Below are positions 306 through 39,730 of a stretch of 64,000 nt of DNA, in pieces. A program made the translations under genes and the position numbers. Numbering within the stretch: position 1 is the stretch's first letter; each line of letters starts with the position of its first letter. A model generated the notes under the pieces. It was not told the DNA's origin and did not search any database. It was given only the letters and a program-made list of their open reading frames with translations. This DNA is from Leucoraja ocellata. Lineage: Eukaryota. The stretch covers positions 62,001 to 126,000 of the forward strand of contig JAWMAR010001626.1 in NCBI GenBank assembly GCA_036785375.1. Direction: 5' to 3'.

Positions 306-422
306 GTTCCCTCAGCTGACAGGGAAGGATGCTGGGGTCTATCAGTGTGTGTGGGGTCTATCAGTGTGTGGCGGAGAATGACCATGGGACAGCAGAGAGG
401 GATGTGACCCTCACTGTAGAAT
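306..422 (+). pseudogene. 3' half of a disrupted C2-set Ig pseudo-exon of the left Siglec paralog
   Basis: FPQLTGKDAGVYQCV...AENDHGTAERDVTLTVE then GTGAGT donor at 423; 19-bp tandem duplication (333-351/352-370) frameshifts it; CR1 inserted upstream. Confidence 0.9.
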
Positions 423-899
423 GTGAGTAGACACACACTGTCATGTCTATGTAAAGGCAGATGGTTTATTGGCCCATGAGAGATGCTGGAATTCACTAAC
501 ACACACACTAGAACCTATGTCCTTTGGTCCTCGATTCACCTACTCTGGGCAAGAGACTTGGTGCGTCTACCCGATCTATTTCCTCTCATGATTTTAAACA
601 CCTCTATAAGATCACCCCTCATCCTCCTGCACTCCAAGGAAGAGAGTTCTAGCCTGCTCAACCTTTCCCTATAGCTCAGGCCCTCTAGTCCTGGCCACAT
701 CCTCATGAATCTTCGCTGCACCCTTTCCTGCTTGACAACATACTCCTATATTTCTCTCGCCTCTTCTAAGATGAGGAAGATTAGATAAAATTATTTGAAG
801 CATTGTGTGCAGGTTCTGGTCACCCCATTACAGGAAGGATGTGGTCCAGGGTGCACAACGCTGCCTAGTTTTAGAGAGTATTACCAATAAGGAATTTTA

Positions 900-1215
900 A
901 GGGGGGCACACAGTGGTTCAACGGTAGAGTTGCTGCCTCACAGCACCAGAGAGCCAGGTTTGAATCCTCACCTACGGGTGCTTGTCGGTACGGAGTTGGC
1001 AAGTTCATCCCATAACCTACGTGGGTTTTCTTCAGGTGCTCCCGGTTTCCTCCCACACTCCAAAGATATACAGGTGTGCAGGTTAATTGGCTGGGTATAT
1101 TTGGTAAATTGTCCCTAGTGTGTTGCAGGATAGTATATGTGTGGGGATCGCTGGCCGGCGTGGACATGGTGGGCCGAAGGGCCTGTTTCGCGCTGTATCT
1201 CTAAACTAAACTAAA
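900..1215 (+). mobile_element. tRNA-derived SINE (HE1/V-SINE-like)
   Basis: A/B-box-like head, conserved GGTTTCCTCCCAC core, LINE-like tail ending (CTAAA)n; inverted paralog at ~32255-32560. Confidence 0.85.
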
Positions 1216-1519
1216 GAAGAGGTTGGATAGACTTTCTCTGGGAGTTCATGTTCACAAGTGATGGGAGCACAATAAGTCCATTCGGCCCATCAAGTCTACA
1301 CTGCATTCGATCATGGGCTGATCTATTTCTCCCTCCCTGCCCCATTCCCCTGTCTTCACCCCAAAACCTCTGACATCCGTACTAATCAATAATCTATCTC
1401 TCTCTGCCTTAAATATAACCACTGACTTGGCCTCCACTGCTGTCTGTGGCTAAGAATTCCACAGATTCACCACCCAGTTGAAAGGCTGAGGGGAGACCTG
1501 ATAGAAAATATAAAACTAT

Positions 1520-2415
1520 TAGACCAAGTGCAGACCCGTTGGGTCTGTTCCCCCAACGTGCGGTTGTGGTGGGGGGGGGGGGGGGGGGGAGAGGGGGGGT
1601 TTAGGGGAGGGACGGTGGGGAGAGGGGATGGAGGTGAGAAAAAGAGAGGAGAGAGAGAGGAGGGGGGAGAGGAGAGGGGGGAGAGGAGAGGGGGGTAGAG
1701 GAGAGGGGGGGGCAGAGGAGCGGGGGAGGAGGGGGAGAGAGAGAGAGAGAGAGGAGGGGGGGGAGAGAGAGGGGGGGGAGAGGGAGGGAGAGGAGGGGAG
1801 GAGAGAGGGAGAGAGGAGAGGGGAGAGGGGAGAGGGGAGAGAGGAGGAGGGGAAGGGGAGAGGGGGAGAGAGGAGAGGGGGGAGAGGAGAGGGGGAGAGG
1901 AGAGGGAGAGAGGAGAGAGGGGGGAGAGAGAGGAGGGGGGAGGGGGGGGGGGGGAGGAGAGAGGGGGGGGGGGGGAGGAGAGAGGGAGAGAGGGGTGGGG
2001 GGGTTTAGAGAGAGAGAACCCAAACCCCCAAACAACCATTTTGCAGGCAGTGTTTTTTTTCTTCAAACTAACCATAACCATATTTTCATTTTCAAACCAA
2101 ATTAAGGGTACTTACTCACAGCTGTGTAGACATTTGTTCAGTCATTCAGAGCTCTGACCTCCATCTTGTAGAGACTGATTGAGGCACACCACTTCCTGGT
2201 TTTTATAGTCCCTCCCCCTCCCACCAGCAGGAGCAGCAGAAAGAATGGGGAATTTTGTAAAAACATTAATATCTCTGTCATATTTCATCGACGGGAAAAA
2301 TCCTCGGCACACATGCGGCGGAGGGGGGCTCTGAGTGAGGTGGCCATAAATTCTCTCGGAAATCGCAGCACAGATGGCCAAAACCGGTCAAGAACAGAGT
2401 TTTAGTAATATAGAT
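1520..2415. mobile_element. Non-autonomous Helitron/Helentron-like insertion with central G/A-rich satellite
   Basis: Absent from the right arm (empty site AAAACTAT|GAGTTGC near 31950); no TSD; 5' hairpin CAGACCCgttGGGTCTG; ends TAGTAATATAGAT. Superfamily assignment is inference. Confidence 0.55.
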
Positions 2416-2544
2416 GAGTTGCATTGATAAGGTAGACAGTCAGAATCTTTTTCACATGGTGCAAATGTCAAGGTTGAGAAAGCAGAGCTTTAAGGTGAGC
2501 GGGGAAAATTGTAAAGGAGATGTGCGGGGCAACTTTTACAATAC

Positions 2545-3165
2545 GATACGACACGATAGAACTTTCTTTATTCCTGGAGAGAACTAAAAACACAAAATAC
2601 ACAAACACAAAAAACTTGAAATATGAAATTAAAGTGACGAGTGGAGCCTTGGGGGCTGTGCAAAGATTACGTGGGAGGGGGGTGGTGGGGAGGCAAGTCA
2701 GTCTCAGTCTACACTATGACAGAAGGGGGAGGAGTTGTATAGTTTGATAGCCACAGGGAAGAAGGATCTCCTGTAGCGTTCTGTGCTGCATCTTGGTGGA
2801 ACCAGTCTGTTGCTGAATGTGCTCCTCAGGTTGAACAATGTGTCACGGAGGGGGTGAGCTGTATTGTCCAGGATGCTCCACAGTTTGAGGAGCATCCTCC
2901 CCTCCAAGACCAAACTCCTGTGAATCCAACTCCGCCCCCAGGATGGAGCCGGCCTTCCTGATGAGCTTGTTAATCCCATTGGCATCCGCAGCCTTCGCCC
3001 TGTTGCCCCGGCACACGGCAGCGAAGAAGATGGCACTGGCCACCACCGATTAGTAGAACATCTGCAGCTTCTTGCTGCAGATGTTGTAGCAGCGGAGCCT
3101 TCTCAGAAAGCTCTGTCCCTTCTTGTACAGGGCCTCAGGGTTCTTGGATCAGTCCCGTTTACTGA
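2545..3165 (-). mobile_element. Rex1/Babar-like LINE 3' fragment (paralog 30310-30930, +)
   Basis: ORF ...NKLIRKAGSILG...TERYRRSFFPVAIKLYN; short tandem-repeat tail. Confidence 0.7.
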
Positions 3166-4059
3166 AGATAGACACAAAATGCTGGAGCAGACAATGCTGG
3201 AGAAACTCAACGGGTGAGGCAGCATCTATGGAGCGAATGAAATGGGCAACCTTTCGGGTCGAGGCCCTTCAGACTGATGTGTGAAAAAGTTACCCCTCAG
3301 ATTCCTATTAAATCTTATCCCCTTCACGTTGAACCTATGTCCTCCGGTGTTCGATTCCCCTACTCTGGGCAAGAGACTCTGCGCATCTACCGGATCTAAT
3401 CCTCTCATTATTTTATATACAATATGTCTGCGTTACAGTTTAGTTTAATGTCATGTTTACCGAGCCACAGTGAAAAGCTTTTGTTGTGTGCTAACCAGTC
3501 GGTGTACAGACCATACATGATTACAATCAAGCTGTTTACAGTGTTTAGATACACGATAAGGGAATAATATTTAGTGCAAGGTAAAGGCAGCAAAGTTCGA
3601 TCAAGGATAGACCGAGGGTCAACAATGAGGTAGATAGTAGTTCAGCACTGCTCTCTGGTTGTGGTGGGATGGTTCAAGGTGTATCTGTGGTGCGTTTAGT
3701 TCAGTTTAGCTTATTGTCACGTGTACCGAGGTACAGTGAAAAGCTTTAGTTGTGTGCTAACCGCAAGAAATTGCATAAAGTTGTGGACATAGCCCAGACC
3801 ATCGCACAATCCAACCTCCCTACCATCGACTCCATCTACACCTCACGCTGCCTCGACAAGGCCAGCAGCATTATCAAGGGCCAGTCTCACCCCGGCCACT
3901 CCCTCTTCTCGGAAATCACTTTTAACACATAGGGGGGGGGATACAATTTCCTGGAGGCCTGATGACAAGACAATGTCTACGACAAGCTACACCTAGTCGA
4001 CGATTAATATGGTTTAATCTACAATTTGAGTGGGAGAAGGGAAAATCAGAAATGTCAGC

Positions 4060-4465
4060 AGCATTTAGAAGGATGAGAGGCAATCTTATTGAAACATGTA
4101 AGATTGTGAAGGGATTGGACACTAGGGGCAGGAAACATGTTCCCGATGTTGGGGGACTCCAGAACCAGGGGCCACAGTTTAAGAATAAGGGGTCGGCCAT
4201 TTAAAACGGAGATGAGGAGAAACGCTTTTACCCAGAGAATTGTGAATCTGTGGAATTCTCTGCCGCAGAAAGCAGTGGAGGCCAATTCAATGGATGCTTT
4301 CAAGATACAGTTAGATAGCGCTCTGAAAGATAGCAGAGTCAAGGGATATGGTGAGAAGACAGGAACGGGGTACTGAATGTGGATGATCAGCCATGATCAC
4401 ATTGAATGGCGGTGCTGGCTCGAAGGGCCAAATGGCCTACTCCTGCACCTATTGTCTATTGTCTT
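4060..4465 (+). mobile_element. CR1/HER1 LINE 3' fragment
   Basis: ORF SRTRGHSLRIRGRPFKTEMRRNAFTQRIVNLWNSLPQ plus conserved 3' UTR. Confidence 0.85.
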
Positions 4466-5493
4466 GAATCTTCTCTGCACTCTTTCCAGCTTCCTTCCTA
4501 GAGCAGTGTGACTAAAGCTGGACGCAATATCTCAAATGCGGTCTCACCAACGTCTTGCACAACAACTAGACTCTAACATCTGCGGCAGGCAAGATATCAT
4601 TGAGTCATAGTGACATCGCATGAAAACAGGCCCATATCCGTGTGAACATCCTCTCATAGTGTTATACTGATACATTGTGGAAACAGGTCCTTTGGCCCAA
4701 CTTGTCCACACCAGCCAACATGCCCCAGTGACACTAGTCCCACCTGCCTGTGCTTGGTTCATATCCCTGCAACCCAGTCCTATCCATGCACCTGTATAAC
4801 TGTTTTGTAAATGTTGGGATAGTCTCTGCCTCAACGGCCTCCTCTGGCAGCACAATCCATACACCCACCACCCACTGTGTGGAAAAGTTACCCCTTAGAT
4901 TCCTATTAAATCTTTTCCCCCTCACCTTAAACCTATGCATTCTGATGTTCGATTCCGCTACTCTGGGCAAGAGACGTGTGAATCTACCCGATCTAATCCA
5001 CTCATGATTTATACACTACTATAAGACTACGTTACAGTTTAGTTTATTGTCATGTTTACCGAGCTACAGTGAAAAGCTTTTATTGTGTGCTAACCAGTCA
5101 GTGTACAGACCACACATGATTACAATCAGGCTGTTTACAGTATTTAGATACATGATAAGGGAACTGGTGTGAAAACGCACATCTCCAGATCCAGGGACAG
5201 TTTCTTCCCAGCTGTTATCAGGCCATTCTACCACAATTAGGGAGCAGTCCTGAACTACTATCTACCTCATTGGTGACCCTCGGACTATGTTTGATCGGAC
5301 TTTGCTGGCTTTACCTTGCACTAAACCTTATTCCCTTTGTTCTGTATCTGTACACTGTGGACAGCTCGATTGTAATCATGTATTGCCTTTCCGCTGACTG
5401 GATAGCACGACACAAAAGCATTTCACTGTACCTTGTTACACGTGACAATAAATTAAACTGTAAAAACTGAAAACACACCTCTTGTTTTTACAG

Positions 5494-5590
5494 ATAATGG
5501 CTTCAGTATTTGGAAGGCAGTTTTGCTTACAGCAGGGATAATACTGATGGCTGTGCTAGCTGGATTCATCATCTACAAGTATATACTGCG
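5494..5590 (+). CDS. Transmembrane exon of the left Siglec-like gene
   Basis: Acceptor cttgtttttacag, donor gtaagt; phase 1 to 2; (Y)NGFSIWKAVLLTAGIILMAVLAGFIIYKYIL(R) gives a ~20-aa hydrophobic helix followed by basic residues. Confidence 0.88.
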
Positions 5591-6514
5591 GTAAGTTTCA
5601 ATAAATCCACATTTTTACTTCCAAATCCATCTCTTTGTCATCTGCTTATGACTGCTTCTGCCAGGCTAACTCCTGTTCACAGACACAAAGTGCTGGAGTA
5701 ACTCAGCGGGTCAGGCAGCATCTCTGGAGAACATGGACAGGTACAAAGTGCTGGAGTAACTCAGCAGGTCAGGCAGCAACTCTGGGGATTCAGGAATAGG
5801 TGACATTTCGGGTCGGGACCTTCTTCAGACTGAAAGGTTGAGAAAGTTAGAACAAATCAGAGCCAGCAACAGATGGCCTTTAGACTGTTGTGAGCCATTT
5901 TGGGCCCCATATCTGAGGGAGAATGTGCTGGCTCGGGAGAGGGTCCAAAGGAGGTTTACGAGAATGATTAACATATGATGAGTGTTTGACACTTACTGGG
6001 CCTGTACTAGCTGGAGTTTAGAAGGATGAGGGGAAGACCTCATTGATATTTAATGAATAGTGAATGGCCTGGATAGAGTGGATGTGGAGAGGATGTTTCC
6101 ACTAGTGGGAGAGTGAGTTTAGGACCAGAGGCCACAGCCTTAGAATTAAAGGACTACCTTTAGGAAGAAGAGTAGGAGTTTCTTCAGTCAGAGGGTGGTG
6201 AATCTGTGTAATTCTTTGCCACAGAAGGCTGTGGAGGCCAAGCCAATCAATATGTTTAAGGCAGAGATAAATAGGTTATTGATCAGTATGGGTGTCAGGG
6301 GTTATGGGGAAAAAGGCAGGAGAATGGGATTAGGAGGAAGAGTTAGATCAGTCATGATTGAATGGCACAGTAGACTTGATGGGCCGAATGACTTCATTCT
6401 GCTCCTATCATTAATAACCTCATCACTTTATGACTAACGTCTAATACAACTGCAACTTTATACTTGGACTTTGCTGATGTGCTGTAAACTTGGTGTGATC
6501 TTCTGTAGCTGCAG

Positions 6515-6581
6515 GAGGGAAGATGCTTCAGGAAACCAAGACACCAATGTGATCTACTGCCCACACTCTGCCACCAATCAG
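6515..6581 (+). CDS. Juxtamembrane cytoplasmic exon of the left Siglec-like gene
   Basis: Acceptor ctgcag, donor gtagtg; 67 nt, phase 2 to 0, compatible with both flanking exons; REDASGNQDTNVIYCPHSATNQ; conserved in the paralog at 29028-29094. Confidence 0.8.
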
Positions 6582-7124
6582 GTAGTGGAACTTTGTATTT
6601 AATCTCAATTTAAGATGAAACAAATGTGGGTACAAAAAGCTGGAGTAACTCAGTGGAACAGGCAGAATCTCTGGAGAGAAGGAACAGGTGATGTTTCGGT
6701 CGAGACTCGAGGGGCCTGAGCTACAGGGAGAGGTTGAGGAGGCTGGGACTCTATTCCTTGGAGTGCAGGGGGATGAGGGGTGATCTTATAGATGTGTATA
6801 AAATCATGAGAGGAATAGATCGGGTAGATGCACAGAGTCTCTTGCCCAGAGTAGGGGAATCGAGGACCAGAGGACATCGGTTCAAGGTGAAGGGGGAAAA
6901 AATTTAAGGGGTTACTTTTTCACACAAAGGGTGGTGCGTGTATGGAACGAGCTGCTGGAGGAAGTAGTTCAGGCTGGGACTATCCCAACGTTTAAGAAAC
7001 AGTTAGAAAGGTACATGGACCAAGCGCAGGCAGGTGGGACTAGTGTAGCTGGACATGTTGGCCGGTGTGGGCAAGTTGGGCAGAAGGGCCTGTTTCCACA
7101 ATGGATGACTCTATATAGACGACG

Positions 7125-7470
7125 ATGTAGAGAGAGATAAAGAACAATGAATGAAAGATAGATGTAAACAAAGTAACGATGATAAAGGAAACAGGCAACT
7201 GTTAGTGGTTTGTTGGGTGAAAATGAGAAGCTGGTGCGACTTGGGTGGGGGAGGGATGGAGAGAGAGGGAACACAGGGCTACCTCAAGTGAGGGAAATCA
7301 ATGTTCATATCACTGGGCTGTAAGCTGCCCAAACGGAATATGTGATGCTGGTCCTCCAATTTGTGTTTAGCCTCACTCTGTCAATGGAGGCGACCGAGGA
7401 CAGAAAAGTCAGTGTGGGAAGGGGAATTAAAGTATTTAGCAACCGGGGGTATGAATATTGATTTATCTAA
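7125..7470 (-). mobile_element. Penelope-like element fragment (GIY-YIG C-terminus); paralog ~28120-28470
   Basis: Encodes KLEDQHHIFRLGSLQPSDMNIDF, similar to the PLE endonuclease end. Confidence 0.65.
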
Positions 7471-7873
7471 CTATGTGAGAGTGTGTGAGTGTGAGAGTGG
7501 GTGTGAGAGAGAGAGAAAGTTTGAGAGAGGGGGAGACGGGGCGAGAGAGGGAGAGAGAGAGAGTGGTTGAAAGTGCGAGTGTGAGAGACACAGTGCCTGA
7601 GTGTGAGCGAGTGAGAGAAAGAGGAGAGGGAGAAAGGGGGAGAGAGAAAGTGTGAAACTGCAAGGGAGAGGGAGAGGGAGAGGGAGAGAAAGTGAGAGAG
7701 GGGGAGAGAGAAGGAGAGCGAGAGTGTGTGAGAGGAGAACATCAACAACATGGCTGAACCTGGGTCTGTGGGAGTACAGGAGTTGTGAACCTTCTCGCTG
7801 ATGGTATTAAATGCCGGGCCACACTGCTCTGTACTAAACCCACAACTGCCCGTCTGCTTCCCTTTACTTCCAG

Positions 7874-8065
7874 AGCACGGGGAGTGGAGAGAACGGGCCG
7901 GCCCCAGTGGAGCGGAAAGAAGGAGGGGAATCAGGAGAGGGGGAAGAGCAAGCGGTCGTGTACGCCGACATGCAGGAGGTGCTGAGCAGCGGAGACACCG
8001 GGCACAGTGGCGAGGGGGTGGAATATGCGGAGCTCTGGTTCCAGTCCAAGCAGGGGAAGGGGTAG
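7874..8065 (+). CDS. Terminal cytoplasmic exon of the left Siglec-like gene with ITIM/ITIM-like motifs
   Basis: Acceptor cctttacttccag, phase 0; STGSGENGPAPVERKEGGESGEGEEQAVVYADMQEVLSSGDTGHSGEGVEYAELWFQSKQGKG*; VEYAEL fits the V/I/L/S-x-Y-x-x-L/V ITIM consensus. Confidence 0.88.
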   Translation, partial: STGSGENGPAPVERKEGGESGEGEEQAVVYADMQEVLSSGDTGHSGEGVEYAELWFQSKQGKG

Positions 8066-8321
8066 GTGGGAGGATGGAGGGAGGGGTGGTGAGGAGGGAG
8101 AGGCGATCGGGAGAGAGCGCTGCACCAGCCTTAACTACCTTGGGTTTCATAGATTAATTAACCCTCTGTAGATGAAATAGTGGGATAACATAGAACTAGT
8201 GTGTGAACGGATGACCGATGGTCGGTGCGGACTCGGTGGGCTGAAGGGCCTGTTTCCCCGCTGTATCTCTTTAAAAAAGCCTTTGTTCTTTAGAACCCAG
8301 ACTGTTCCGCGGGTAACTATT

Positions 8322-10953
8322 GATTTTTTTGATTTTTTTAAAAGAATAGAATAAGAAAACGAAGTTAGATAGTAAAGGATAGAAAGATGTGAAATATATA
8401 GCGTGTGAAGAAAGAAAACGAGTAAATGAAGAAAGTTGAGAGAGAAAATAGAGAAAAGAAAAGAAAATAAAAAAAGAAAAGGAGATCATTATTTATAATC
8501 TTGACCAACCCTCGTCCAGTCCTGAAACAGTTATTTTTTACAATTGTGTTGCACCATATGATTCCAAAAAAACGACGAATGGAGACCAACTCGTTATGAA
8601 TTGGTCTGATTTATCCATTAGGAGGAATCGCATTTCCTCAAGATGAGCGGTGTGCAACATACTTGCAATCCACATTTTAAGCGTTGGTATTGATGTACCC
8701 TTCCAAAATTTAAGTATTAATTTTTTTGCTATTATTAAACCATAGTTAAGGAATAGATTTTGAGATGTGTTCAATTTATTCCCATCTTCCATTACACCAA
8801 ATATAATCATTTCAGTATTAGGTTCCATTCTTGTCTTGAATAATTTTGTAAATATTTCAAAAATATCATTCCAAAATCTATAAAGTTTTATGCAGGAAAC
8901 TAAGGAGTGTGTTTTATAGTTGCCTTTTGGGCTAGACATTTATCACAAGTGGCGGATATATTTGGATAAAATTTGTTCAATCTTGTTTTTGAATAATATA
9001 ATCTATGTACAATTTTAAATTGTATTACATTATGTCTTACATTAATTGAACATTTGTGAATATATATCAGGTATTTTTCCCATTTAACCTTAGTAATTTT
9101 TATCATTAGTTCCCGTTCCCACTCTTCTCTAAGTACCTCTGTCGATGGTAGGTCTATATTTAGAATACTATTATATAAATATGATATTAATTTTTGTGAG
9201 TCAGCTTCAATATTCATTGCTTCTTCCAATGTCAGGAGTTACTTTTTGATATCCTTGTACAGGTACAGGTATATATTTTTTCACAAAGTCGCAAATCTGA
9301 AGATATTTAAAATATTGGTTGTTTTTCAATTTAAATTTTAATTGTAGTTGTTAGAATGATAGTAGGTTTCCCATTTCGTACATATCCCCGATCCTTCTAA
9401 TTCCGAGACTTTCCGATTGGTTATATGTTTTATCAATAAGAGATGGTTTAAATAAAGGGTTATTCGCAATTGGCATTAACAGTGATAGATTTCTTAATTT
9501 TAAAGATAATTTTATTTGTTTCGAAATTCTTATTGTACCATATATAATTGGGTTCTTCTTATATATTGTGTTATTCCGGTTTTTTGGGGAAAAGAGGATC
9601 GTTCCTATATTACAAGGATGGCAATCCTCCTTCTCCATTTTTATCCATTCTTTCTGTTGGGTAGAACTATCCAACCAATAAATCATATTCTTAATATGCA
9701 CTGCCCAGTAATAATACATAAAATTCGGAAGTGAATTTCGAAAGTGAAAGTCCCCCGACCTCTTTTGGTTTACATAAGTGTTTTTTTGTGATTCTATGTG
9801 ATCTATAGTCCCAAATATAATTTGTAATGTTAGAGACTAATTTTTTTTAAAAATATTTTGGTATATATACCGGTATAGACTGAAATACGTATAGTAATTG
9901 TGGTAGGAAGATCATTTTTATTGCATTTATTCTACCTAATAATGATAAGGGAAGTGCTTTACAAAATTTAATCAGCGTATTAAGTTTATTTAATAAAGGT
10001 ATGAAATTAGCGTTGAATAATGCTTTATATTTTCTAGTAATCTGAATACCCAAATATTTAAATTTTTCTGTTGCGATTTTAGAGGGGAACTTCAATAAGT
10101 GTGTAGGTTCTTGAGGTTTTAATGTCATGATTTCACTTTTGTTCCAGTTTATTCTATATCCAGAAAAAGATCCAAATTCCTCTATTAAGTTTAATAAATT
10201 TGGTATGCTTGTTTGTGACTTTGTAATGTATAAACGTATATCGTCTGCATATAATGAGATTTTATTCTTTGCGTCCCTGGTATTATAGCCCTGAATATTC
10301 GGATGAATTCTTATACTTTCAGCCAGGGGTTCTATCATAAGGGCAAATAGCAGGGGTGATAGTGCACATCCCTGCCTATTACCCCTTGATAGTTTACATT
10401 TTTGAGATAACATGTTATTAGTTAAAATTCTTGCCATCGGTTTATCATATAATAATTTTACCCATGTTATAAAATTCCCATATTAAATTTTTGTAGTACT
10501 TTACATAAGTATTGCCACTCTACCTGATCAAATGCTTTCTCTGCATCCAAAGAAATAATTGATATATCTTCTTCCTCTACTTTATGCGAGTACATTATAT
10601 TAAACAGGCGTCTCAGATTATTAAATGAGTATCTTTTAGGTATAAACACCGTTTGATCAGGGTTTATCAATTTACTAATATATTTGCTTAATCTTCTTGC
10701 TAAAATCTTTGCTAAAATTTTCTGATCTGTATTTAAAAGTGATATAGCTCTGTACGAGCCCGGATCTTCTAAATCTTTATCTTTTTTTTGGAATAAGCGT
10801 AATAGTTGATTCTGTTAGTAGTTTGTTTTCTTTAAAAGCATGGGAGTATAAATTAAATAAATAAGGGGTCGTTATCTCCTGAATTTTTTTAATAAAATTC
10901 ATTATTAAAACCATCTGGTCCCGGTGTCTTACCATTTTTCAGCGATTTTATTG
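8322..10953 (-). mobile_element. 5'-truncated L1 LINE (ORF2 RT and C-terminus), left-arm specific
   Basis: RT motifs SLDAEKAFD, RQGCALSPLLF, YADD; A-rich 3' end; 11-bp TSD GGGTAACTATT (8311-8321/10954-10964); empty site near 27270. Confidence 0.92.
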
Positions 10954-13564: not shown

Positions 13565-13572
13565 GTGTGTAG

Positions 13573-31014: not shown

Positions 31015-31920
31015 TAGCAGTGTTAGCTGTGAGGAGGATGCTAGGAGACTGCAAGGTGACTTGGATAGGCTGGGTGAGTGGGCAAATGTTTGGCAGATGC
31101 AGTATAATGTAGATAAATGTGAGGTTATCCATTTTGGTGGCGGAAAACAGGAAAGCAGACTATTATCTAAATGGTGGCCGACTAGGAAAAGGGGAGATGC
31201 AGCGAGACCTGGGTGTCATGGTACACCAGTCATTGAAAGTAGGCATGCAGGTGCAGCAGGCAGTGAAGTAAGCGAATGGTATGTTAGCTTTCATAGCAAA
31301 AGGATTTGAGTATAAGAGCAGGGAGGTTCTACTGCAGTTGTACAGGGTCTTGGTGAGACCACACCTGGAGTATTGCGTTTTTGGTCTCCAAATCTGAGGA
31401 AGGACATTATTGCCATAGAGGGAGTGCAGAGAAGGTTCACCAGACTGATTCCTGGGATGTCAGGACTGTCTTATGAAGAAAGACTGGATAGACTTGGTTT
31501 ATACTCTCTAGAATTTAGGAGATTGAGAGGGGATCTTATAGAAACTTACAAAATTCTTAAGGGGTTGGACAGGCTAGATGCAGTAAGATTGCTCCCGATG
31601 TTGGGGAAGTCCAGGACAAGGGGTCACAGCTTAAGGATAAGGGGGAAATCCTTTAAAACCGAGATGAGAAGAACTTTTTTCACACAGAGAGTGGTGAATC
31701 TCTGGAACTCTCTGCCACAGAGGGTAGTTGAGGCTAGTTCATTGGCTATATTTAAGAGGGAGTTAGATGTGGCCCTTGTGGCTAAGGGGATCAGAGGGTA
31801 TGGAGAGAAGGCAGGTACGGGATACTGAGTTGGATGATCAGCCATGATCATATTGAATGGCGGTGCAGGCTCGAAGGGCCGAATGGCCTACTCCTGCACC
31901 TAATTTCTATGTTTCTATGT
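31015..31920 (+). mobile_element. Young CR1/HER1 LINE 3' ~900 bp, right-arm specific
   Basis: Near-identical to 29262-30225; empty site TTTTTCACATGGTGC at ~2450; ATGT at both junctions. Confidence 0.92.
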
Positions 31921-33378
31921 GAAAAAGATTCTGACTTCTCAATGCAACTCATAGTTTTATATATTTCTATCAGGTCTCCCCCTCAGCCTTCCAATGGGTG
32001 GTGAATCTGTGGAATTCTTTGCCACAGACGGCAGTGGAGGCCAAGTCAGTGGTTATATTTAAGGCAGAGATAGATTCTTCATTAGTACGGGTGTCAGAGG
32101 CTATGGAGTGAAGGCAGGGGAATGGGGCAGGGGAGGGAGAAATACATCAGCCATGATCGAATGGCAGAGTATACTTGATGGGCCAAAAGGCCTTATTGTG
32201 CTCCCATCACTTGTGAACATGAACTCCAGAGAAAGTCTATCCAACCTCTTCTTTAGTTTAGTTTAGAGATACAGCGCGGAAACAGGCCCTTCGGCCCACC
32301 GTGTCCACGCCTGCCAGCGATCCCCACACATATACTATCCTGCACACACTAGGGACAATTTACAAATATACCAAGCCAATTAACCTGCACACCTGTATAT
32401 CTTTGGAGTGTGGGAGGAAACCGGAGCACCCGAAGAAAACCCACGTAGGTTATGGGATGAACTTGCCAACTCCGTACCGACAAGCACCCGTAGTGAGGAT
32501 TCAACCTGGCTCTCTGGTGCTGTGAGGCAGCAACTCTACCGTTGAACCATTGTGTGCCCCCCTTGAAACTCCTTATTGCTAATACTCTCTAAACTAGGCA
32601 GCGTTGTGCACCCTGACCACATCCTTCCTGTAATGGGGTGACCAGAACTGCACACAATGCTTCAAATAATTTTATCTAAACTTCCTTATCTTAGAAGAGG
32701 AGAGAGGAAATATAGGAAGTATGTTGTCAAGCAGGAAAGGGTGCAGCGAAGATTCATGAGGATGTGGCCAGGACTAGAGGGCCTGAGCTATAGGGAAAGG
32801 TTGAGCAGGCTGGGACTCTCTTTCTTGGAGAACAGGGGGATGAGGAGTGCTCTTATAGAGGTGTTTATAATCATGAGAGGAATAGATCGGGTAGATGCAC
32901 CAAGTCTATTGCCCAGAGTAGGTGAATCGACGACCAGAGGACATAGGTTCAAGGTGAAGGGGAAATTATTTAAACGGAACCTGGGCGGTGACTTTTTCAT
33001 ACAAAGGCTGGTTGTTGTATGGAATGAGCTGCCAGAGGAGGTCGCTGAGGCTGGGACTATCCCAGCGTTTAAGAAACAGACAAGTACATGGTTAGGGCAA
33101 GTTTGGAGGGATATGGGCCAAACATGGGCAGGTTGGACTAATGTAGCTGGGACATGTAGGTTGTTGAAAGCAAGTTGAGCAGTTCCCACGCTGTATCACT
33201 CTATGAATCAATGGCTCTATAGCTCTATGGCTCTATGAGAAGGCAGGAGAATGGGGTTAGGAGGGAGAGATAGATCAGCCATGATTGAATGGTGCAGTAG
33301 ATTTGACCATTCAACATTCTAATTCTGCCCCTATCATTTATGACGTTGTGAGGGATGTGTTAGTGTGTGTCTACTCAC

Positions 33379-33660
33379 ATTCTACAGTGAGGGTCACATC
33401 CCTCTCTGCTGTCCCGTGTTCATTCACCGCCACACACTGATAGACCCCAGCGTCCTGCCATGCCAGCTGAGGGAACTCCAACCACAGCTCGTTGCTGGAA
33501 TATGTTGTGTTCAGCGTGACACCAAGATGTATCCACGTCAGGTTAGATGCTGGGAAACTCTGAACGGAGCAGAGGATCGCTGCAAAGTTTCCTTCCTTTA
33601 CAATCACCCGGGAACTGTTCGCATCGGCGTGGGAAGTGATTGAGAGATTTCGTGGAGCAT
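33379..33660 (-). CDS. Siglec-like gene, intact C2-set Ig exon
   Basis: ttgtctttag/gtgagt, 282 nt, phase 1-1; YAPRNLSI...VKEGNFAAILCSVQSFPASNLTW...DAGVYQCVAVNEHGTAERDVTLTVE. Confidence 0.93.
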
Positions 33661-33761
33661 CTAAAGACAAACGAAGGTTTAAACGCGAGTTAACATGGCA
33701 GAATTCAACGCGCCAACCAGGACAGTACAGAGAGAAAAGATGAAGTACGAATGCAACTAGT

Positions 33762-33789
33762 CTGAAGAAGGGTCTCGACCCGAAACGTC
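33762..33789 (+). ncRNA. Minimal hammerhead-ribozyme-like motif within a Penelope-associated repeat
   Basis: CTGAAGA-A-GGGTC-TC-GACCC-GAAAC-GTC: CUGANGA core, stem II, GAAA and palindromic ACGT stem III; stem I weak. Confidence 0.45.
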
Positions 33790-33959
33790 ACCCATTCCTA
33801 CTCTCCAGAGATGCTGCCTGACCCGCTGAGTTACTCCATCTTTTTGAATCTATCTTTGGTTTAAACCAGCATCTGCAGTTCCTTCCTACTCATTCCGTCT
33901 GCTCCACTGTGAAATCTCCTCAAGATATGTCTACTTTGAAGAAATTCTCCTCTCTCTGA

Positions 33960-35265
33960 CGAGAGTTAGAGTCATAGGGTGATCGTGTGGAAACAGGCCC
34001 TTCAGCCCAACTTGCCCACACCGGCCAACATGTCCCAGATACACTAGTCCCACCTGCCCATAACCCTCCATATTTGTTGTATCCATGTACCTGTCTAACT
34101 GTTTTTTAAACGTTGGGATAGACACTGCCTCAACTACCTCCTCTGGCACCGTGTTCCATACACCAACTACCCTTTGTGTAAAAAGTTCCTCAGGTTCCTA
34201 TTAAATCTTTTCTCCTTCACCTTGAACCTATGTCCTCTGGTCCTCGATTCCCCTATTCTATGCAAGATACTCTGTGCATCCACTCAATCTCTTCCCCTCA
34301 TGATCTTTTCACTATAAGATCACCCCACATCCATCTGCGCTCCAAGCAATAGAGACCCAGCCTGCACAACCTCTCCCTGTAGCTCGGGCCCTCTAGTCCT
34401 TGGCAACATTCTCATAAATCTTCACTGAACCCTTTCAAGCTTGATAATATCTTTCCTGTAACATGGTGCCCAGAACTGAACACAATATTCTAAATGCGGC
34501 CTCACCAACGTCTTATACAACTGCAACATGACCTCCCAACTTCTATACTCAATACTCTGACTGATGAAGGCCAGTATGCCAAAAGGCTTTTTGACCACCT
34601 GTGACTTGATCTTCAAGGAACCTTGCACCTGCACTCCTTGATCCCTCTGCTCTACAACACTCCCCACAGGCCTACCATTAACTGTGTTGGTGCTGCTTTT
34701 GTTAGACGTCCCAAAATGCAACATCTCACATATCTCTGATTTAAATTCAATTAACCATTCATCAGCTCATCTGGCCAATGATCAAGTTCCTGCTGCAATC
34801 TTTCACAACATTGCAGTTCTGCCACACCCCCTCTCACTGCTCCCCCTCTGTGATGCCTCCTGCTCTCCGATCTTACATTCATTGTTCTTTATCTCTCTAC
34901 ATAGAAACATAGAAATTAGGTGCAGGAGGAGGCCTTTCAGCCCTTCGAGCCAGTACCGCCATTCATTGTGATCACGGCTGATCGTCCCCAATCAATAACC
35001 CGTGCCTGCCTTCTCCCCATTTCCCTTGACTCCACTAGCCCCTAGAACTCTATCTAACTCTCTCTTAAATCCATCCAATGATTTGGCCTCCACTGCGCTC
35101 TGTGGCAGGGAATTCCACAAATTCACAACTCTCTGGGTGAAAAAGTTATTTCTCACCTCAGTCTTAAATGGCCTCCCCTTTATTCTAAGACTGTGGCCCC
35201 TGGTTCTGGACTCGCCCAATATTGGGAACATTTTTCCTGCATCTAGCTTGTCCAGTCCTTTTTAT
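33960..35265 (-). mobile_element. CR1-type LINE fragments in an intron
   Basis: ORFs LQLYKTLVRPHLEYCVQFWAP and SRTRGHSLRIKGRPFKTEV. Confidence 0.8.
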
Positions 35266-35914
35266 AAGGAACGAGCTGCTGGAGGAGGTAGTTGAGGCTG
35301 GGATCATTGCAACGTTTAAAAAACAGTTGGACAGGTAACATGGATAGGAGGTAGACAAAAGTGCTGGAGAAACTGAGCGGGTGGAGCAGCATCGATGGAG
35401 CGAAGGAAATAGGCAATGTTTCGGGCCAAAACCCTTCTTCAGACTGATGGACGTCAAACATGGATAGGACTTGTTTGGAGGGATATGGGCCGAAGTAGGG
35501 CAGGTGGGATGCGTGTAGATGGGGCTCATTGGCCGGTGTGGGCAAGTTGGGCCAAAGGACCTGTAACCATGCTGTAAGACTCTATGACTCTAAAGACACT
35601 GCCTGACCCACTGAGTTGCTCCACTACTTTGTGTTTAAGCAACGTGAGGAGTGACGATACATAGAGGGAGGCATTGAAGGTTTCTGGGTGGAAAGACCAA
35701 TATAATCCAACAACGTCAGGCAGAGGTGAGACAGGTTACTTACAGGTGGGGAACAAACAAGGCTGTAGATGTGGGTGGCACGGTGGCGCAGTGGGTAGAG
35801 CTCCTGCCTCACAGCGCCAGAGACCCGGGTTCAATCCTGACCACCCGTGCCTTTCTGTACGGAGTTTGCACGTTCTCCCCGTGACCTGCCTGGGTTTTCT
35901 CCGAGATCTTGAGG

Positions 35915-36002
35915 ATGTGTGTCTGTATGTGTTTGAGTGAATGAGTGCGTGTGTGTGTGTGTGAAGAGAGGGAGCGTGTGTGTGGCGATTGTTTGTGAGA
36001 GA

Positions 36003-36062
<60 letters not shown>

Positions 36063-36100
36063 GTGCATGTGTGTGTAAGTGCGAGTGCGAGTGAGAGTGT
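35915..36100. repeat. (GT)n microsatellite
   Basis: Long pure GT run at ~36004-36057 with degenerate flanks; close to the breakpoint of the left-arm deletion. Confidence 0.95.
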
Positions 36101-36176
36101 TAGTGAATTCCAGCATCTCTCATGGGCCAATAAACCATCTGCCTTTACATAGACATGACAGTGTGTGTCTACTCAA

Positions 36177-36888
36177 ATTCTACAATGAGGGTCACATCCC
36201 TCTCAGCTGTCCCATGGTCATTCTCCACTACACACTGATAGACCCCAGCATCCTTCCCTGTCAGCTGAGGGAATTGTAAAGAATAGGCTTGTATTCACTG
36301 AAGTTTAGAAGGATGAGGGGATGTCTTATTGAAACATATAAAATTATAAAAGGACTGGACAAGGTAGATGCACGAATGTTCCCAATGTTTCCCAGAACCA
36401 GGGTCTATAGTCTTAGAATAAAGGGGAAGCCATTTAAGGCTGAGGTGAGAAAAACCCTTTTCACCCAGAGAGTTGTGAATTTGTGGAATTCCCTGCCAGA
36501 GAGAGCACTGGAGGCCAAGTTACTCGATGGATTTAAGAGAGAGTTAGATAGAGCTCTAGGGGCCAGTGGAATCAAGGGATATGGGGAGAAGACAGGCACG
36601 GGTTATTGATTGGGGACGATCAGCCATGACCACAATGAATGGCGCTGCTGGCTCGAAGGGCCGAATGGCCACCTCCTGCACCTATTTTCTACGTCTATGT
36701 CTATGTCCATCCACAGCTCGTTGCTGGAACGCGTTGTGTTCAGCGTGACACCGATGTCTCCACATCAGGTTAGACGCTGGGAAACTCTGGAGGGAGCAGA
36801 GGATCGCTGCAGAGTTTCCTTCCTTTATACTGACCCAGGAATTGTTCACATTGTCGGGGGAAGTGATTGAGAGATCCTGGGGGGGTGT
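36177..36888 (-). pseudogene. Dead C2-set Ig pseudo-exon, paralogous to 33379-33660, split by CR1 (36275-36705)
   Basis: TPQDLSITSPDNVNNSWVSIKEGNSAAILCSLQSFPASNLMW... and FPQLTGKDAGVYQCV..NDHGTAERDVTL; extra C in the C-run, 2-nt deletion, CR1 insertion, donor GT>TT. Confidence 0.9.
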
Positions 36889-37877: not shown

Positions 37878-38171
37878 ATTCCACAGTCAGTGTGAGGGTC
37901 TGCTCCGATGACACAGTTGGGTATGTGACTCTGCAGGTGAGGCTTTGTCCGTGATGTTTGAGCGCTGGGGTCAGGGACAGAACAGAAGTATATGTCAGAG
38001 TGTTACCCTGCTGAGTTACACTGTGTGAGGCTGACGGTGGTTCATCAGCGGGGGTGACCCAGGTTAAGGTGGGTGCCGTTCCATCACACGTGGTGCTGAA
38101 GGAGCAGGTCATGTTCACAGGCTTTCCTGCCACCAATTCAGCAGGAAATATCGTGGGTTTATCCGTGAAAT
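37878..38171 (-). CDS. Siglec-like gene, first C2-set Ig exon
   Basis: gtgttag/gtaagt, 294 nt, phase 1-1; DFTDKPTIFPAELVAGKPVNMTCSFSTTCDGTAPTLTW...HHGQSLTCRV; extra Cys typical of the Siglec inter-domain disulfide. Confidence 0.95.
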
Positions 38172-38860
38172 CTAACACACAGAGAAACAAATACTGTTAG
38201 TTAAATATCACTGGATACATCGGTTCACATCGAAATCCCAGTCCCACACGAGCAAGGATGTTTTTACAAGGTATAGAAGTGTGAAAACGCACACCTCCAG
38301 ATTCAGGGACAGTTTCTTCCCAGCTGTTATCAGGCAACTGAATCATCCTACCACAACCAGGGAGCAGTCCTGAACTACTATCTGCCTCAGCAGAAAGATT
38401 ATACATGATTGCAATCGAGCCATTTGCAGTGTATGGATACGTGAAGGAGTTTCTTCCCAGAGGCAATTCGGACTGTAAACGCCTTTCTCACCAGGGACTA
38501 ACTGTATAGAACGTTTTTCCTTCTATTATTTATTAAGTAAAATAATATGTGTGTTATGATTGTGTTTATAATTTGTTTGGTTGTTTTGTTGTTCCGCGAG
38601 CATTGCCACTTTCATTTCACTGCACATCTCGTATGTGTATGTGACAAAAAAACTTGACTTGACTTGACTTGACTTGATAAGGGAATAACGGTTAGTGCAA
38701 GGTAAAGCCAGCAAAGTCCAATCAAGGATAGTCCGATGGGTCACCAGTGAAGTCGACAGTAGTTCAACACTGCTATGTGGTTGTGGTAGGATGGTTCAGT
38801 TGCCCGATAACAGCTGGGAGAAACTGTTGAGTGAATGAGTGAATTAAACAGAGCACTTAC

Positions 38861-39223
38861 CACTAACAGTGAGCTGTGTTACAGTGGGGTAGCTGTAACG
38901 ATTTCCCCCATCGAAATCAACTCTGAACAAATAAGGACCTGCATCTTGCGGCGTGACGTTGTCTATAACCAGGGAACAGTCGTTGTTTCTCAGGATTCCT
39001 GACAGCCGGGTCCGATGCTGAAACTTTGTTGATTCTAGACTGTGATCCCCGGAGTGGAAGGCTACAGGATCTTTGTGCGACCCACTGTTATACCAGATTC
39101 CAGTCCGTGGTTTACTGTTCAGATACGACGGGTATGAGTAGTGACACGGAATCCGTGCACACAAACCGTTCTGCGCTGTCACAGCTCTGGGATTCCACGC
39201 TCTCGAGCGTCCCGACATCACGG
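38861..39223 (-). CDS. Siglec-like gene, N-terminal V-set sialic-acid-binding exon
   Basis: ctcctcag/gtaagt, 363 nt, phase 1-1; GLCARIPC, GIWY, RTRLSG, NNDCSLVIDNV, DAGPYLFRVD (essential Arg), NRYSY. Confidence 0.95.
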
Positions 39224-39359
39224 CTGAGGAGAGAAGGAACAATCTTTAGCAGTGAACACCCTGTCCGTTCACTGGACTTTCCACACCGTTTATCCTGTGC
39301 TGTGGACCCGGTGTGAACAGAGCGTAGAAGAGCAGCATGATGGCGTAGTGGTAGAGTCT

Positions 39360-39660
39360 CCCTCCTCAACGCCCCTCCCCCAGTGCATCACTCCCTCCTC
39401 ACCGCCCCTCCCCCAATGCATCACTCCTCCTCACCGCCCCTCCCCCAATGCATCACTCCCTCCGCACCGCCCCTCTCCCAGTGCATCACTCCCTCCTCAC
39501 CGCCCCTCCCACAGTGCATCACTCCCTCCGCACCGCCCCTCCCCCAATGCATCACTCCCTCCTCACCGCCCCTCCCCCAGTGCATCACTCCCTCCTCACC
39601 GCCCCTCCCCCAGTGCATCACTCCCTCCTCACCGCCCCTCCCCCAGTGCATCACTCCCCG
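39360..39660. repeat. 33-bp minisatellite, ~9 copies, in a Siglec intron
   Basis: Unit CAGTGCATCACTCCCTCCTCACCGCCCCTCCCC. Confidence 0.95.
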
Positions 39661-39690
39661 TAAACACTTCTGAGTTGCTGCTGATGGTAC

Positions 39691-39730
39691 CTTGGAGAAG
39701 GGAGAGGACGAAGAACGATCTCCCGATCAT
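39691..39730 (-). CDS. Siglec-like gene, signal-peptide exon (exon 39691-39772 including UTR)
   Basis: acaATG MIGRSFFVLSLLQ plus phase-1 G, donor gtacca; joins in frame to the V-set exon (..LLQAVMSG); acceptor ctttctcttccag at 39773. Confidence 0.88.

What the first reader, a model, noticed from the sequence alone, without database searches (positions are those of the whole stretch)
306..39730. Candidate membrane-inhibitory / soluble-decoy Siglec pair formed by reciprocal exon loss in an inverted duplication
Seen: two convergent paralogs. The + copy has intact TM (5494-5590), 67-nt (6515-6581) and ITIM (7874-8065) exons with compatible phases. A ~3.1-kb deletion (junction ~510, joining right-arm 36095 to 32950) removed its intact third C2 exon. 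The - copy keeps leader+V+C2+C2 fully open but has no TM exon. Known: Siglecs occur as paired receptors (SIGLEC5/14, 11/16), and soluble forms can compete for sialylated ligands. Inference: the copies subfunctionalised into a short CD33-like inhibitory receptor and a secreted lectin. I know of no description of this in cartilaginous fish.
Basis: partly seen in the sequence, partly recalled or inferred. Interest (0 to 1): 0.85.

Follow-up and report, generated by a model that had tools for sequence, protein, structure and literature searches.

The report
Skate Siglec twins with reciprocal exon loss
Two mirror-image copies of a skate sialic-acid-receptor (Siglec) gene have each lost a different exon, so one keeps its membrane anchor and inhibitory tail and the other has none, but whether the anchorless copy works as a secreted protein or is dying is not settled.

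Summary
The window holds an inverted duplication with 4.4% mismatches between the arms carrying two convergent copies of a Siglec gene.

- **The + copy** has intact TM, 67-nt and tyrosine-motif exons. A 3.1-kb deletion removed its last C2 exon.
- **The - copy** has an intact leader, V, C2 and C2 exon, each with its splice sites. It has no TM exon anywhere in the window.

- Both copies carry a C2 pseudoexon split by a repeat element. The same lesion appears in Amblyraja radiata gene models.
- The - copy's tail is decaying, with four indels and a lost stop codon. The + copy's TM and 67-nt exons match an annotated A. radiata "CD33-like" V-C2-TM-tail protein.
- Keeping the - ectodomain intact by chance has probability 0.007-0.085 in my simulation.

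The "inhibitory receptor plus secreted decoy" reading is therefore plausible but unproven, and a dying duplicate is nearly as likely. The scan holds 32 other Siglec notes on other DNA of this genome.

The parts
1..15683 (.). Left arm of the inverted duplication. It is cut by the window start and carries the 3' part of the + copy.
   Evidence: 7 colinear reverse-complement blocks against 36571-18520.
15684..18519 (.). Unique spacer between the arms.
   Evidence: the innermost block pairs 14837-15683 with 19367-18520.
18520..36571 (.). Right arm as far as it can be paired. It carries the - copy, whose 5' exons run on to 39730.
1..305 (+). Repeat element inserted in the dead C2 exon of the + copy. 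The window begins inside it.
   Evidence: 1-509 pairs with 36571-36090, and the same element has 10 or more other copies in the window at 77-91% identity.
306..422 (+). Second half of the dead C2 exon in the + copy. It has a 19-nt tandem duplication (333-351 and 352-370) and a GT donor at 423-424.
504..509 (+). Junction of the 3.1-kb deletion that removed the last C2 exon from the + copy.
   Evidence: three-way alignment; block ends at right-arm 36090 and 32956.
5494..5590 (+). TM exon of the + copy, 97 nt, phase 1 to 2.
   Evidence: 29 of 31 residues match A. radiata XP_032870526. It is the only copy in the window.
6515..6581 (+). 67-nt cytoplasmic exon of the + copy.
   Evidence: 22 of 22 residues match XP_032870526.
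7874..8065 (+). Last coding exon of the + copy, with VVYADM, VEYAEL and the stop TAG.
   Evidence: 85.7% identical to the XP_032870526 tail.
8321..10953 (.). Insertion specific to the left arm. It is AT-rich and holds reverse-transcriptase-like ORFs.
19368..23611 (.). Insertion specific to the right arm, with reverse-transcriptase-like ORFs.
27422..27706 (-). Relic of the last exon in the - copy. It has a 12-nt deletion, a +1/-1 indel pair, V>W in the ITIM, and a +1 that puts the old TAG (27528-27526) out of frame. The new stop is at 27421-27419.
29028..29094 (-). 67-nt exon of the - copy. Its splice sites are intact, and 3 of 22 residues are changed.
29317..30196 (.). 0.88-kb LINE fragment standing where the + copy has 3.1 kb (3243-6347) that includes the TM exon.
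31043..31920 (.). Second copy of the same LINE fragment, inverted and 96.5% identical. It stands where the + copy has a GA-rich stretch (1522-2454).
33379..33660 (-). Last C2 exon. It is intact, phase 1 to 1, and present only in the - copy.
   Evidence: (I-set 1.1e-10).
36177..36273 (-). Second half of the dead C2 exon in the - copy. The donor at 36176-36175 is TT.
36274..36705 (-). Repeat element inserted in the dead C2 exon. It is shared by both arms.
36706..36888 (-). First half of the dead C2 exon in the - copy. The acceptor is intact. It has one extra C in a C run and a 2-nt deletion.
37878..38171 (-). First C2 exon of the - copy, intact, phase 1 to 1.
   Evidence: (C2-set_2 9.9e-10).
38861..39223 (-). 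V-set exon of the - copy, intact, phase 1 to 1.
   Evidence: (V-set 1.8e-11).
39691..39730 (-). Leader exon of the - copy, with ATG at 39730 and a GT donor.
   Evidence: The start matches the homologues' MIGRSFF start.

Best explanation
A gene of the expanded skate Siglec family was copied by an inverted segmental duplication. The ancestral gene ran leader, V, C2, a C2 exon already broken by a repeat element, an intact C2, TM, a 67-nt exon and a tyrosine-motif exon.

Each copy then lost one exon through a deletion of about 3 kb.

- **The + copy** lost the intact C2 exon and keeps the TM and tail. If its unseen 5' exons are whole, it encodes a short V-C2-TM receptor with one canonical ITIM (VEYAEL). 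This is the architecture NCBI annotates in A. radiata as "CD33-like".
- **The - copy** lost the TM exon. Its old tail exons are now drifting, but its leader, V and two C2 exons remain open with all signals. It can therefore only encode a membrane-less product: signal peptide plus V-C2-C2. That product ends at a TGA formed where the last C2 exon meets the 67-nt exon.

Shown: the structure, the lesions, and the contrast between a conserved + tail and a decaying - tail.

Inferred: that the - ectodomain is still kept by selection, and that it is made and secreted.

Speculative: that it competes with the + copy for sialylated ligands.
For: **Siglec identity**
- Pfam gives V-set at 1.8e-11, C2-set_2 at 9.9e-10 and I-set at 1.1e-10.
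- PDB sequence hits are MAG at 1.8e-17, sialoadhesin at 2.3e-17 and CD33 at 8e-14. The arginine of YLFRVD aligns with theirs.

**Structure**.

**+ tail constrained**
- 22 of 22 residues of the 67-nt exon and 29 of 31 TM residues equal A. radiata XP_032870526. There are no indels.

**- tail released**
- 3 of 22 residues are changed in the 67-nt exon.
- The last exon has 4 indels, the stop is lost, and the ITIM's V is now W.

**- ectodomain kept**
- There are no stops and no frameshifts.
- The ATG and 7 of 7 splice dinucleotides are intact.
- No gaps appear against the nearest homologues, and only 2 of 310 residues depart at columns that are 90% or more conserved.
- Simulated neutral decay at the arms' own rates leaves it intact in 0.7%, 3.1% or 8.5% of 20000 trials, at 4.9, 3.0 or 1.7 indels per kb.
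- All 4 coding indels of the - copy lie in the 259 nt of tail out of 1238 coding nt. By my arithmetic, the chance of that is about 0.002.

**Precedent for the short architecture**: XP_032870526, 350 aa, V-C2-TM-tail.
Against: - There is no RNA evidence. Two RNA runs gave zero depth on the V exon and the last C2 exon. Their species was not shown to be the window's, and only about 5% of each run was read.
- The + copy's V and C2 exons are outside the window.
- With no indels at all, the simulation leaves the ectodomain intact in 34% of trials. Exons are less indel-prone than the repeat-rich introns that set my rate, and the tail is G-rich and prone to slippage.
- Gene conversion is likely in this family. 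The - copy's C2 and pseudoexon are 86-96% identical to A. radiata XP_032870550, but its V is only 76% identical.
- The last C2 exon carries 5 residues seen in none of 30 homologues.
- The T|GA stop lies 65 nt before the last junction, and no AATAAA or ATTAAA follows the last C2 donor within 1.4 kb.
- The +1/-1 indel pair in the - tail restores the frame. That hints the tail was still in use for part of the time, which would make the TM loss later.
Confidence: 0.45

Rival explanations
1. The - copy is an unprocessed pseudogene, a duplicate dying in a birth-and-death receptor cluster. Its ectodomain frames are still open by chance, or because the TM loss is fairly recent, or because neighbouring paralogues overwrite it by gene conversion. 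Only the + copy, at most, works.
For: - The TM exon is gone, the tail has 4 indels and the stop is lost.
- A dead C2 exon with an intact acceptor sits in the transcript path.
- The predicted stop is borderline for nonsense-mediated decay, and there is no nearby poly(A) signal.
- Intactness by chance is not excluded: 0.7-8.5%, or 34% without indels.
- Exon mosaicism fits conversion.
- There is zero RNA depth on the exons in the two runs laid.
- The last C2 exon has 5 residues found in no homologue.
Against: - 979 nt of coding sequence plus the ATG and 7 splice sites are untouched, while 259 nt of tail took 4 indels.
- The essential arginine and all six cysteines of V and the first C2 are kept.
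- Only 2 of 310 residues change at conserved columns.
- The arms show 4.4% divergence and arm-specific insertions, so wholesale arm-to-arm conversion is not acting in the part that can be seen.
Confidence: 0.38
2. Neither copy is a working gene. The + copy's 5' exons are missing or broken, or its transcripts are trapped by the repeat-split C2 exon, which in this arm still has a GT donor. The locus would then be debris of a turning-over cluster.
For: - The + copy's V and C2 exons were not seen, because the window starts inside the repeat insert.
- Its dead C2 half keeps a GT donor at 423-424 and has a 19-nt duplication.
- Its tail has 6 residues that differ from both homologues, including L>M, which breaks the proximal ITIM consensus.
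Against: - The TM and 67-nt exons are nearly identical to an annotated A. radiata protein, and there are no indels in 356 nt of + copy coding sequence.
- A. radiata genes carrying the same dead exon are still modelled as V-C2-...-TM-tail proteins.
Confidence: 0.12
3. The mirror structure, or the absence of the TM exon in the right arm, is an assembly error at repeated elements.
For: - Two 0.88-kb LINE fragments, 96.5% alike, flank the place where the sequence is missing.
- I could not check long-range structure with reads.
Against: - The arms differ by 4.4% with 81 gap openings, and each has its own insertion of 2.6 kb or 4.2 kb. This is not a duplicated haplotype.
- Contigs of an independent run (X15) cover right-arm unique sequence with 0-3 differences per 100 nt, for example 36109-36197 and 33283-33391.
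Confidence: 0.03

Closest known systems
Amblyraja radiata XP_032870526.1, "myeloid cell surface antigen CD33-like" (350 aa, NCBI model)
   Same: It has the same leader start, V, C2, TM, 67-nt exon and tail in the same order. The C2 joins directly to the TM. TM is 29 of 31 identical, the 67-nt exon 22 of 22, and the tail 85.7% identical to the + copy.
   Different: It comes from another species or paralogue. Its V is 78% identical to the - copy's V. Its motifs are VVYANL and LEYAEL, both consensus ITIMs, whereas the window has VVYADM and VEYAEL. It is an automatic model and I saw no RNA support.
A. radiata XP_032870550.1/551.1 (302 aa) and XP_032870542.1 (471 aa), NCBI Siglec-12/13 models
   Same: They read the same frameshifted C2 exon ending in the same repeat-derived stop as the - copy's dead exon, at 86% identity over 73 residues. 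The 302-aa model has no TM. All lie on one 13.4-Mb scaffold with XP_032870526.
   Different: In the window that exon has one more frameshift and a TT donor, so the TM-less product proposed here must skip it. Their V domains are 75-76% identical to the window's.
Mammalian paired Siglecs (SIGLEC5/14, SIGLEC11/16); recalled, not tested here
   Same: Neighbouring duplicates share a ligand-binding end but differ at the signalling end.
   Different: Those pairs are inhibitory versus activating, with a charged TM residue and the DAP12 adaptor, and gene conversion keeps their ectodomains alike. Here the partner has no TM at all, and the ectodomains of the two copies could not be compared.
Soluble Siglec forms (for example soluble Siglec-5, PMC5125011, listing and abstract start only) and the germline-encoded soluble LILRA3 (recalled)
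   Same: A receptor ectodomain without an anchor could compete for the receptor's ligands.
   Different: The paper's abstract describes engineered soluble Siglec-5 variants. My recollection, untested here, is that natural soluble Siglec forms arise by splicing or shedding. Here the TM exon is deleted from the gene. No expression, secretion or binding has been shown.
Human CD33 (Siglec-3), V-C2-TM-ITIM
   Same: It has the two-domain layout proposed for the + copy. The V exon hits CD33 structures at 8e-14.
   Different: The best structure hits are MAG and sialoadhesin at 2e-17, so orthology to CD33 is not shown. The short layout here arose by a recent deletion.

Membership tests
Siglec (I-type lectin) | N-terminal V-set Ig domain most like those of known Siglecs | tested here: met
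   Pfam V-set at 1.8e-11. The top 18 PDB sequence hits are all Siglecs: MAG, sialoadhesin, CD33 and Siglec-5, -7, -8, -10 and -15.
Siglec (I-type lectin) | Conserved arginine on the F strand that holds the sialic acid carboxylate | tested here: met
   The R of YLFRVD aligns with the R of YYFRGD (MAG) and YNFRFE (sialoadhesin). It is kept in all 14 homologues aligned. That this is the binding arginine is recalled.
Siglec (I-type lectin) | Siglec cysteine pattern: three Cys in V with no F-strand Cys, and three Cys in the first C2 | tested here: met
   Read. V has GLC, IPC and DCS, and YLF stands where other V-sets have Y-x-C. The first C2 has TCS, TCD and TCR. The meaning of the pattern is recalled.
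Siglec (I-type lectin) | Binds sialylated glycans | not testable with these tools
   Needs protein and glycan binding assays.
CD33-related Siglec, inhibitory type | Cytoplasmic ITIM plus a second ITIM-like tyrosine motif | tested here: inconclusive
   In the + copy the distal VEYAEL fits (I/V/L/S)xYxx(I/V/L), but the proximal VVYADM fails at +3. The A. radiata homologue has VVYANL and LEYAEL. In the - copy the motifs are VVYANM and WEYAEL, and neither fits.
CD33-related Siglec, inhibitory type | Orthology to the mammalian CD33-related clade | not tested
   No tree was built. MAG and sialoadhesin score slightly better than CD33. The NCBI names are automatic.
Paired inhibitory/activating receptors | A partner with a charged TM residue and a short tail; ectodomains kept alike by gene conversion | tested here: not met
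   The - copy has no TM exon. The + TM core has no charged residue. Ectodomain likeness could not be tested because the + copy's exons are outside the window.
Germline-encoded secreted decoy of a membrane receptor | Signal peptide and ligand-binding ectodomain, no anchor, and actually expressed and secreted | tested here: inconclusive
   The sequence part is met. Expression is unresolved: zero depth on the exons in two RNA runs of a species not shown to be the source.

The most novel reading that the evidence does not exclude
A skate keeps, under selection, a germline-encoded secreted Siglec (signal peptide, V, C2, C2) next to its ITIM-bearing membrane twin. The two were made from one gene by an inverted duplication followed by reciprocal exon deletions. 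This would be a receptor/decoy pair in the oldest jawed-vertebrate lineage. It would be a soluble counterpart to the inhibitory/activating Siglec pairs of mammals.
Probability: 0.25. Interest if true: 0.6.

Novelty: new member of a known kind. Interest (0 to 1): 0.35.

Why it matters
If the membrane-less copy is expressed and kept by selection, it would show two things. First, tuning a sialic-acid checkpoint with a soluble competitor is ancient. Second, exon-level loss after duplication can split a receptor into a signalling form and a secreted form.

If it is a dying duplicate, the locus is still useful. It is a dated example of birth-and-death turnover, repeat-element damage and exon mosaicism in the large and barely described Siglec family of skates and rays. 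The annotated models for this family include read-through artefacts.

Tried and rejected
1. **Unequal crossing-over as the cause of the 3.1-kb loss.** I considered recombination between the two similar C2 exons (88-90% alike). This is rejected. The three-way alignment puts the junction in a CA repeat and a repeat element 80 nt past the dead exon, not in the exons.

2. **Loss of the 67-nt exon's acceptor in the - copy.** This was my own early reading (note 1). It is rejected. The exon uses the CAG acceptor, which is intact in both copies, and the A. radiata protein junction agrees.

3. **A hidden TM exon in the - copy or elsewhere.** None was found.

4. **RNA evidence.** The look-up of sequencing runs listed no holder on record as RNA.
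   - In read laying on 33230-39229 I used X15, X3, X23 and X24, which is 4 of the 24 runs listed.
   - The two RNA runs covered only repeat elements. Their depth was 0 in the V bins and in the core bin of the last C2 exon, and at most 0.45 in the first C2 bins.
   - X15 behaves like DNA of a close relative.

6. **Proteins of the window's own species.**
   - The V exon as query gave 1 hit among 1 candidate (the length filter applies).
   - XP_032870526 residues 228-350 gave 3 hits among 175 candidates.
   - P0007 residues 1-160 gave 51 hits among 115 candidates.
   - None is identical to a window exon. The best are 96% for C2 and 89% for V.

7. **An intronic poly(A) site after the last C2 exon.** None within 1.4 kb.

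8. **Literature.** Five searches gave no description of Siglec pairs in cartilaginous fish in the listed papers. I read one passage of PMC8455134 and the listing and abstract start of PMC5125011. Supplements were not consulted.

9. **Earlier notes of this scan.** The look-up by words returned nothing.

10. **Steps not taken.** I did not build a tree or fold a structure. I did not search a joined spliced model. Exons were searched, aligned and simulated one by one, and the joined step was left out.

Full report
**What is in the window**

Self-comparison shows an inverted duplication. Seven colinear reverse-complement blocks pair 1-15683 with 36571-18520 around a 2.8-kb spacer. Over 8307 aligned nt the arms differ at 362 positions (4.36%) and by 81 gap openings. 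Each arm also has its own insertion with reverse-transcriptase-like ORFs: 8321-10953 on the left and 19368-23611 on the right. This is an old, real-looking duplication, not a doubled haplotype. The window has no N runs.

**The genes are Siglecs**

On the - strand, the ORF holding 39223-38861 scores as V-set (1.8e-11). The one holding 38171-37878 scores as C2-set_2 (9.9e-10), and the one holding 33660-33379 as I-set (1.1e-10). Against the sequences of solved structures, the top 18 matches of the V exon are all Siglecs. MAG scores 1.8e-17, sialoadhesin 2.3e-17 and CD33 8e-14. The arginine in YLFRVD aligns with the arginine of YYFRGD and YNFRFE.

An exhaustive search with the V exon found 942 proteins at E up to 0.001 and 25 at E up to 1e-30. 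The ten of these that I looked up are elasmobranch models named Siglec, CD33-like or MAG-like. The closest proteins come from skates: Amblyraja radiata, Leucoraja erinacea and Rhinoraja longicauda. No stored protein is identical to a window exon. The best are 96% for the C2 exon and 89% for the V exon. The source species is therefore a skate or close kin whose own proteins are not in the collections I could reach.

**Anatomy of the - copy**

- Leader 39730-39691, starting at the ATG, with a GT donor.
- V exon 39223-38861.
- First C2 exon 38171-37878.
- A dead C2 exon (described below).
- Last C2 exon 33660-33379.
- 67-nt exon 29094-29028.
- Relic of the last exon, from 27706.

The four ectodomain exons are open. 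The ATG and all seven splice dinucleotides needed are present, and the phases agree, each being 1 to 1.

The dead C2 exon has these features:
- It starts at an intact acceptor (36888).
- It has one C too many in a C run.
- It has a 2-nt deletion.
- A 432-nt repeat element interrupts it at 36705-36274.
- It resumes at 36273-36177.
- It ends at a TT where the donor should be.

**Anatomy of the + copy**

The window opens inside the same repeat element (1-305). The second half of the dead exon follows at 306-422, with a 19-nt tandem duplication and a GT donor. The repeat insertion is therefore older than the inverted duplication.

At 504-509 the + copy jumps from the equivalent of right-arm 36090 to 32956. 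The junction lies in a CA repeat and a repeat element. That 3.1-kb deletion took away the intact last C2 exon.

Downstream lie three exons with compatible phases:
- the TM exon 5494-5590, with AG and GT flanks and an uncharged hydrophobic core;
- the 67-nt exon 6515-6581;
- the last exon 7874-8065, with VVYADM, VEYAEL and a TAG stop.

**Loss of the TM exon in the - copy**

Where the + copy has 3.1 kb (3243-6347) including the TM exon, the - copy has 0.97 kb. Of that, 29317-30196 is a LINE fragment. Its twin is inverted, 96.5% alike, and sits at 31043-31920.

No TM exon exists anywhere else in the window:
- the DNA pattern gives 1 match at up to 3 mismatches;
- tblastn of the exon's translation finds only 5493-5591;
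- 197 stored homologues hit no other TM.

Joining the last C2 donor (…GAA T) to the 67-nt exon (GA GGG…) makes TGA at the junction. The scan's other note on this window (s1-885090) said this, and I confirm it.

**Comparison with annotated skate proteins**

- **XP_032870526 (350 aa).** This A. radiata model runs leader, V, C2, then directly TM, the 67-nt exon and the tail. That is exactly the short layout proposed for the + copy. The + copy matches it at 29 of 31 TM residues, 22 of 22 residues of the 67-nt exon and 85.7% of the tail.
- **XP_032870550/551 (302 aa) and XP_032870542 (471 aa).** These read the same frameshifted C2 exon, and the 302-aa model ends at the same repeat-derived stop. The lesion is thus older than the window's duplication and is carried by several genes on one 13.4-Mb scaffold.
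- **Age of the duplication.** Both window copies have M where all six homologous tails aligned have L (YANL or YTNL). The window's duplication is therefore younger than its split from those genes.

**Polarity of change in the tails**

With the A. radiata tails as outgroup, the two copies differ sharply.

- The + copy has no change in the 67-nt exon. It has 6 residue changes and no indel in the last exon.
- The - copy has 3 of 22 residues changed in the 67-nt exon. In the last exon it has a 12-nt deletion, a +1/-1 pair that rewrites four residues, V to W at the -2 position of the distal ITIM, and a +1 that removes the stop and adds about 35 codons.

The - tail is no longer kept. The + copy's TM and 67-nt exons are.

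**Is the - ectodomain kept?**

I simulated neutral decay of the four exons, each handled on its own. I used half the arm divergence (0.0225 substitutions per site). At 4.9, 3.0 or 1.7 indels per kb, the exons stayed free of stops, frameshifts and signal loss in 0.7%, 3.1% and 8.5% of 20000 trials. With no indels the figure was 34%.

No gap separates these exons from their nearest homologues. Only 2 of 310 residues depart at columns that are 90% or more conserved. All four coding indels of the - copy lie in the 259 tail nt out of 1238 coding nt, which by arithmetic has a chance of about 0.002.

Several points weigh against constraint:
- The tail is G-rich and slippage-prone.
- The +1/-1 pair restores the frame, which hints the tail was used for a while.
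- The last C2 exon has 5 residues seen in none of 30 homologues.
- The family is mosaic. The - copy's C2 is 96% identical and its dead exon 86% identical to XP_032870550, but its V is only 76% identical. This fits gene conversion, which can keep frames open without selection on this copy.

**Expression**

No run is on record as an RNA holder. I laid 4 of the 24 listed runs on 33230-39229.

- The two oligo-dT RNA runs (about 5% of each was read) gave depth only on repeat elements. Depth was 0 in the V bins and in the core bin of the last C2 exon (33430-33629), and at most 0.45 in the first C2 bins. Nothing showed that their organism is the source species.
- Run X15 covers exons and unique intron sequence with 0-3 differences per 100 nt. 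It looks like DNA of a close relative.

Expression is therefore untested. Two Logan contigs of about 1-1.5 kb encode intron-less relatives: P0161 (V 89% identical) and P0169. Close paralogues or orthologues are thus transcribed somewhere.

**Fate of a - copy transcript**

The dead exon has an acceptor but no donor, so skipping to the last C2 exon is plausible, though not shown. If the dead exon is used, the extra C shifts the frame and a stop follows within the exon. Either way the product lacks a TM.

The T|GA stop lies 65 nt before the last exon junction, which is borderline for nonsense-mediated decay. No AATAAA or ATTAAA occurs within 1.4 kb after the last C2 donor.

**Verdict**

The twins are Siglecs and the exon losses are reciprocal. 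The + tail is conserved and the - tail is decaying, and the - copy can only make an anchorless protein.

| Reading | Weight |
|---|---|
| The anchorless copy is a maintained, secreted lectin | 0.45 |
| The anchorless copy is a dying duplicate | 0.38 |
| Neither copy works | 0.12 |
| Assembly error | 0.03 |

A decoy function is inference only.

Literature searches found no account of such pairs in cartilaginous fish among the listed papers. One passage of PMC8455134 only lists Siglecs among gnathostome gene families. The abstract start of PMC5125011 reports activity of soluble Siglec-5. NCBI's automatic annotation already shows both architectures in A. radiata, so I rate this a new member of a known kind.

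The scan holds 32 other Siglec notes on other pieces of this genome, none followed up.

Noticed in passing
window 39358-39658: A 33-nt unit is repeated 9.2 times (94% matches) in intron 1 of the - copy, between the leader and V exons.
   Followed up: partly
window 29317-30196 and 31043-31920: Two 0.88-kb LINE fragments, inverted and 96.5% alike, flank 0.85 kb of the right arm. Each stands where the left arm has other sequence: 3243-6347 with the TM exon, and the GA-rich 1522-2454. This suggests one rearrangement rather than two plain insertions.
   Followed up: partly
window 38861-39223 versus 37878-38171: The exons are mosaic. The - copy's first C2 exon is 94-96% identical to A. radiata and L. 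erinacea models, while its V exon is 72-78% identical to the same proteins and 89% to an unnamed Logan transcript. This fits V-exon conversion or fast V evolution.
   Followed up: partly
A. radiata and L. erinacea proteins P0007, P0160, P0167, P0199: Several NCBI models of this family run into intron or repeat-element sequence, or join half exons. P0167 matches the window's intron translation after the C2 exon at 93%. Annotated lengths and names in this family are unreliable.
   Followed up: partly
window 1644-2017: A GA-rich tandem array with periods of 14, 28 and 29 nt gives long ORFs in all frames. It is present only in the left arm.
   Followed up: no
window 33230-39229: Repeat elements in the introns draw heavy RNA read depth on both strands in two oligo-dT runs. 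Many reads run on into unlike sequence (share 0.92-0.93). These families are therefore widely transcribed in that organism.
   Followed up: no
window 17323-17549 and 58491-59018: Other first-stage notes place an IZUMO-like fragment in the spacer and a KRAB-type exon downstream. I did not examine them.
   Followed up: no
window 33627 and 38004: In run X15 one contig each reads another letter inside the last C2 exon and the first C2 exon. Worked out by hand from the exon frames, both change the residue (A to D and N to D). The N to D change restores the state seen in the homologues.
   Followed up: partly
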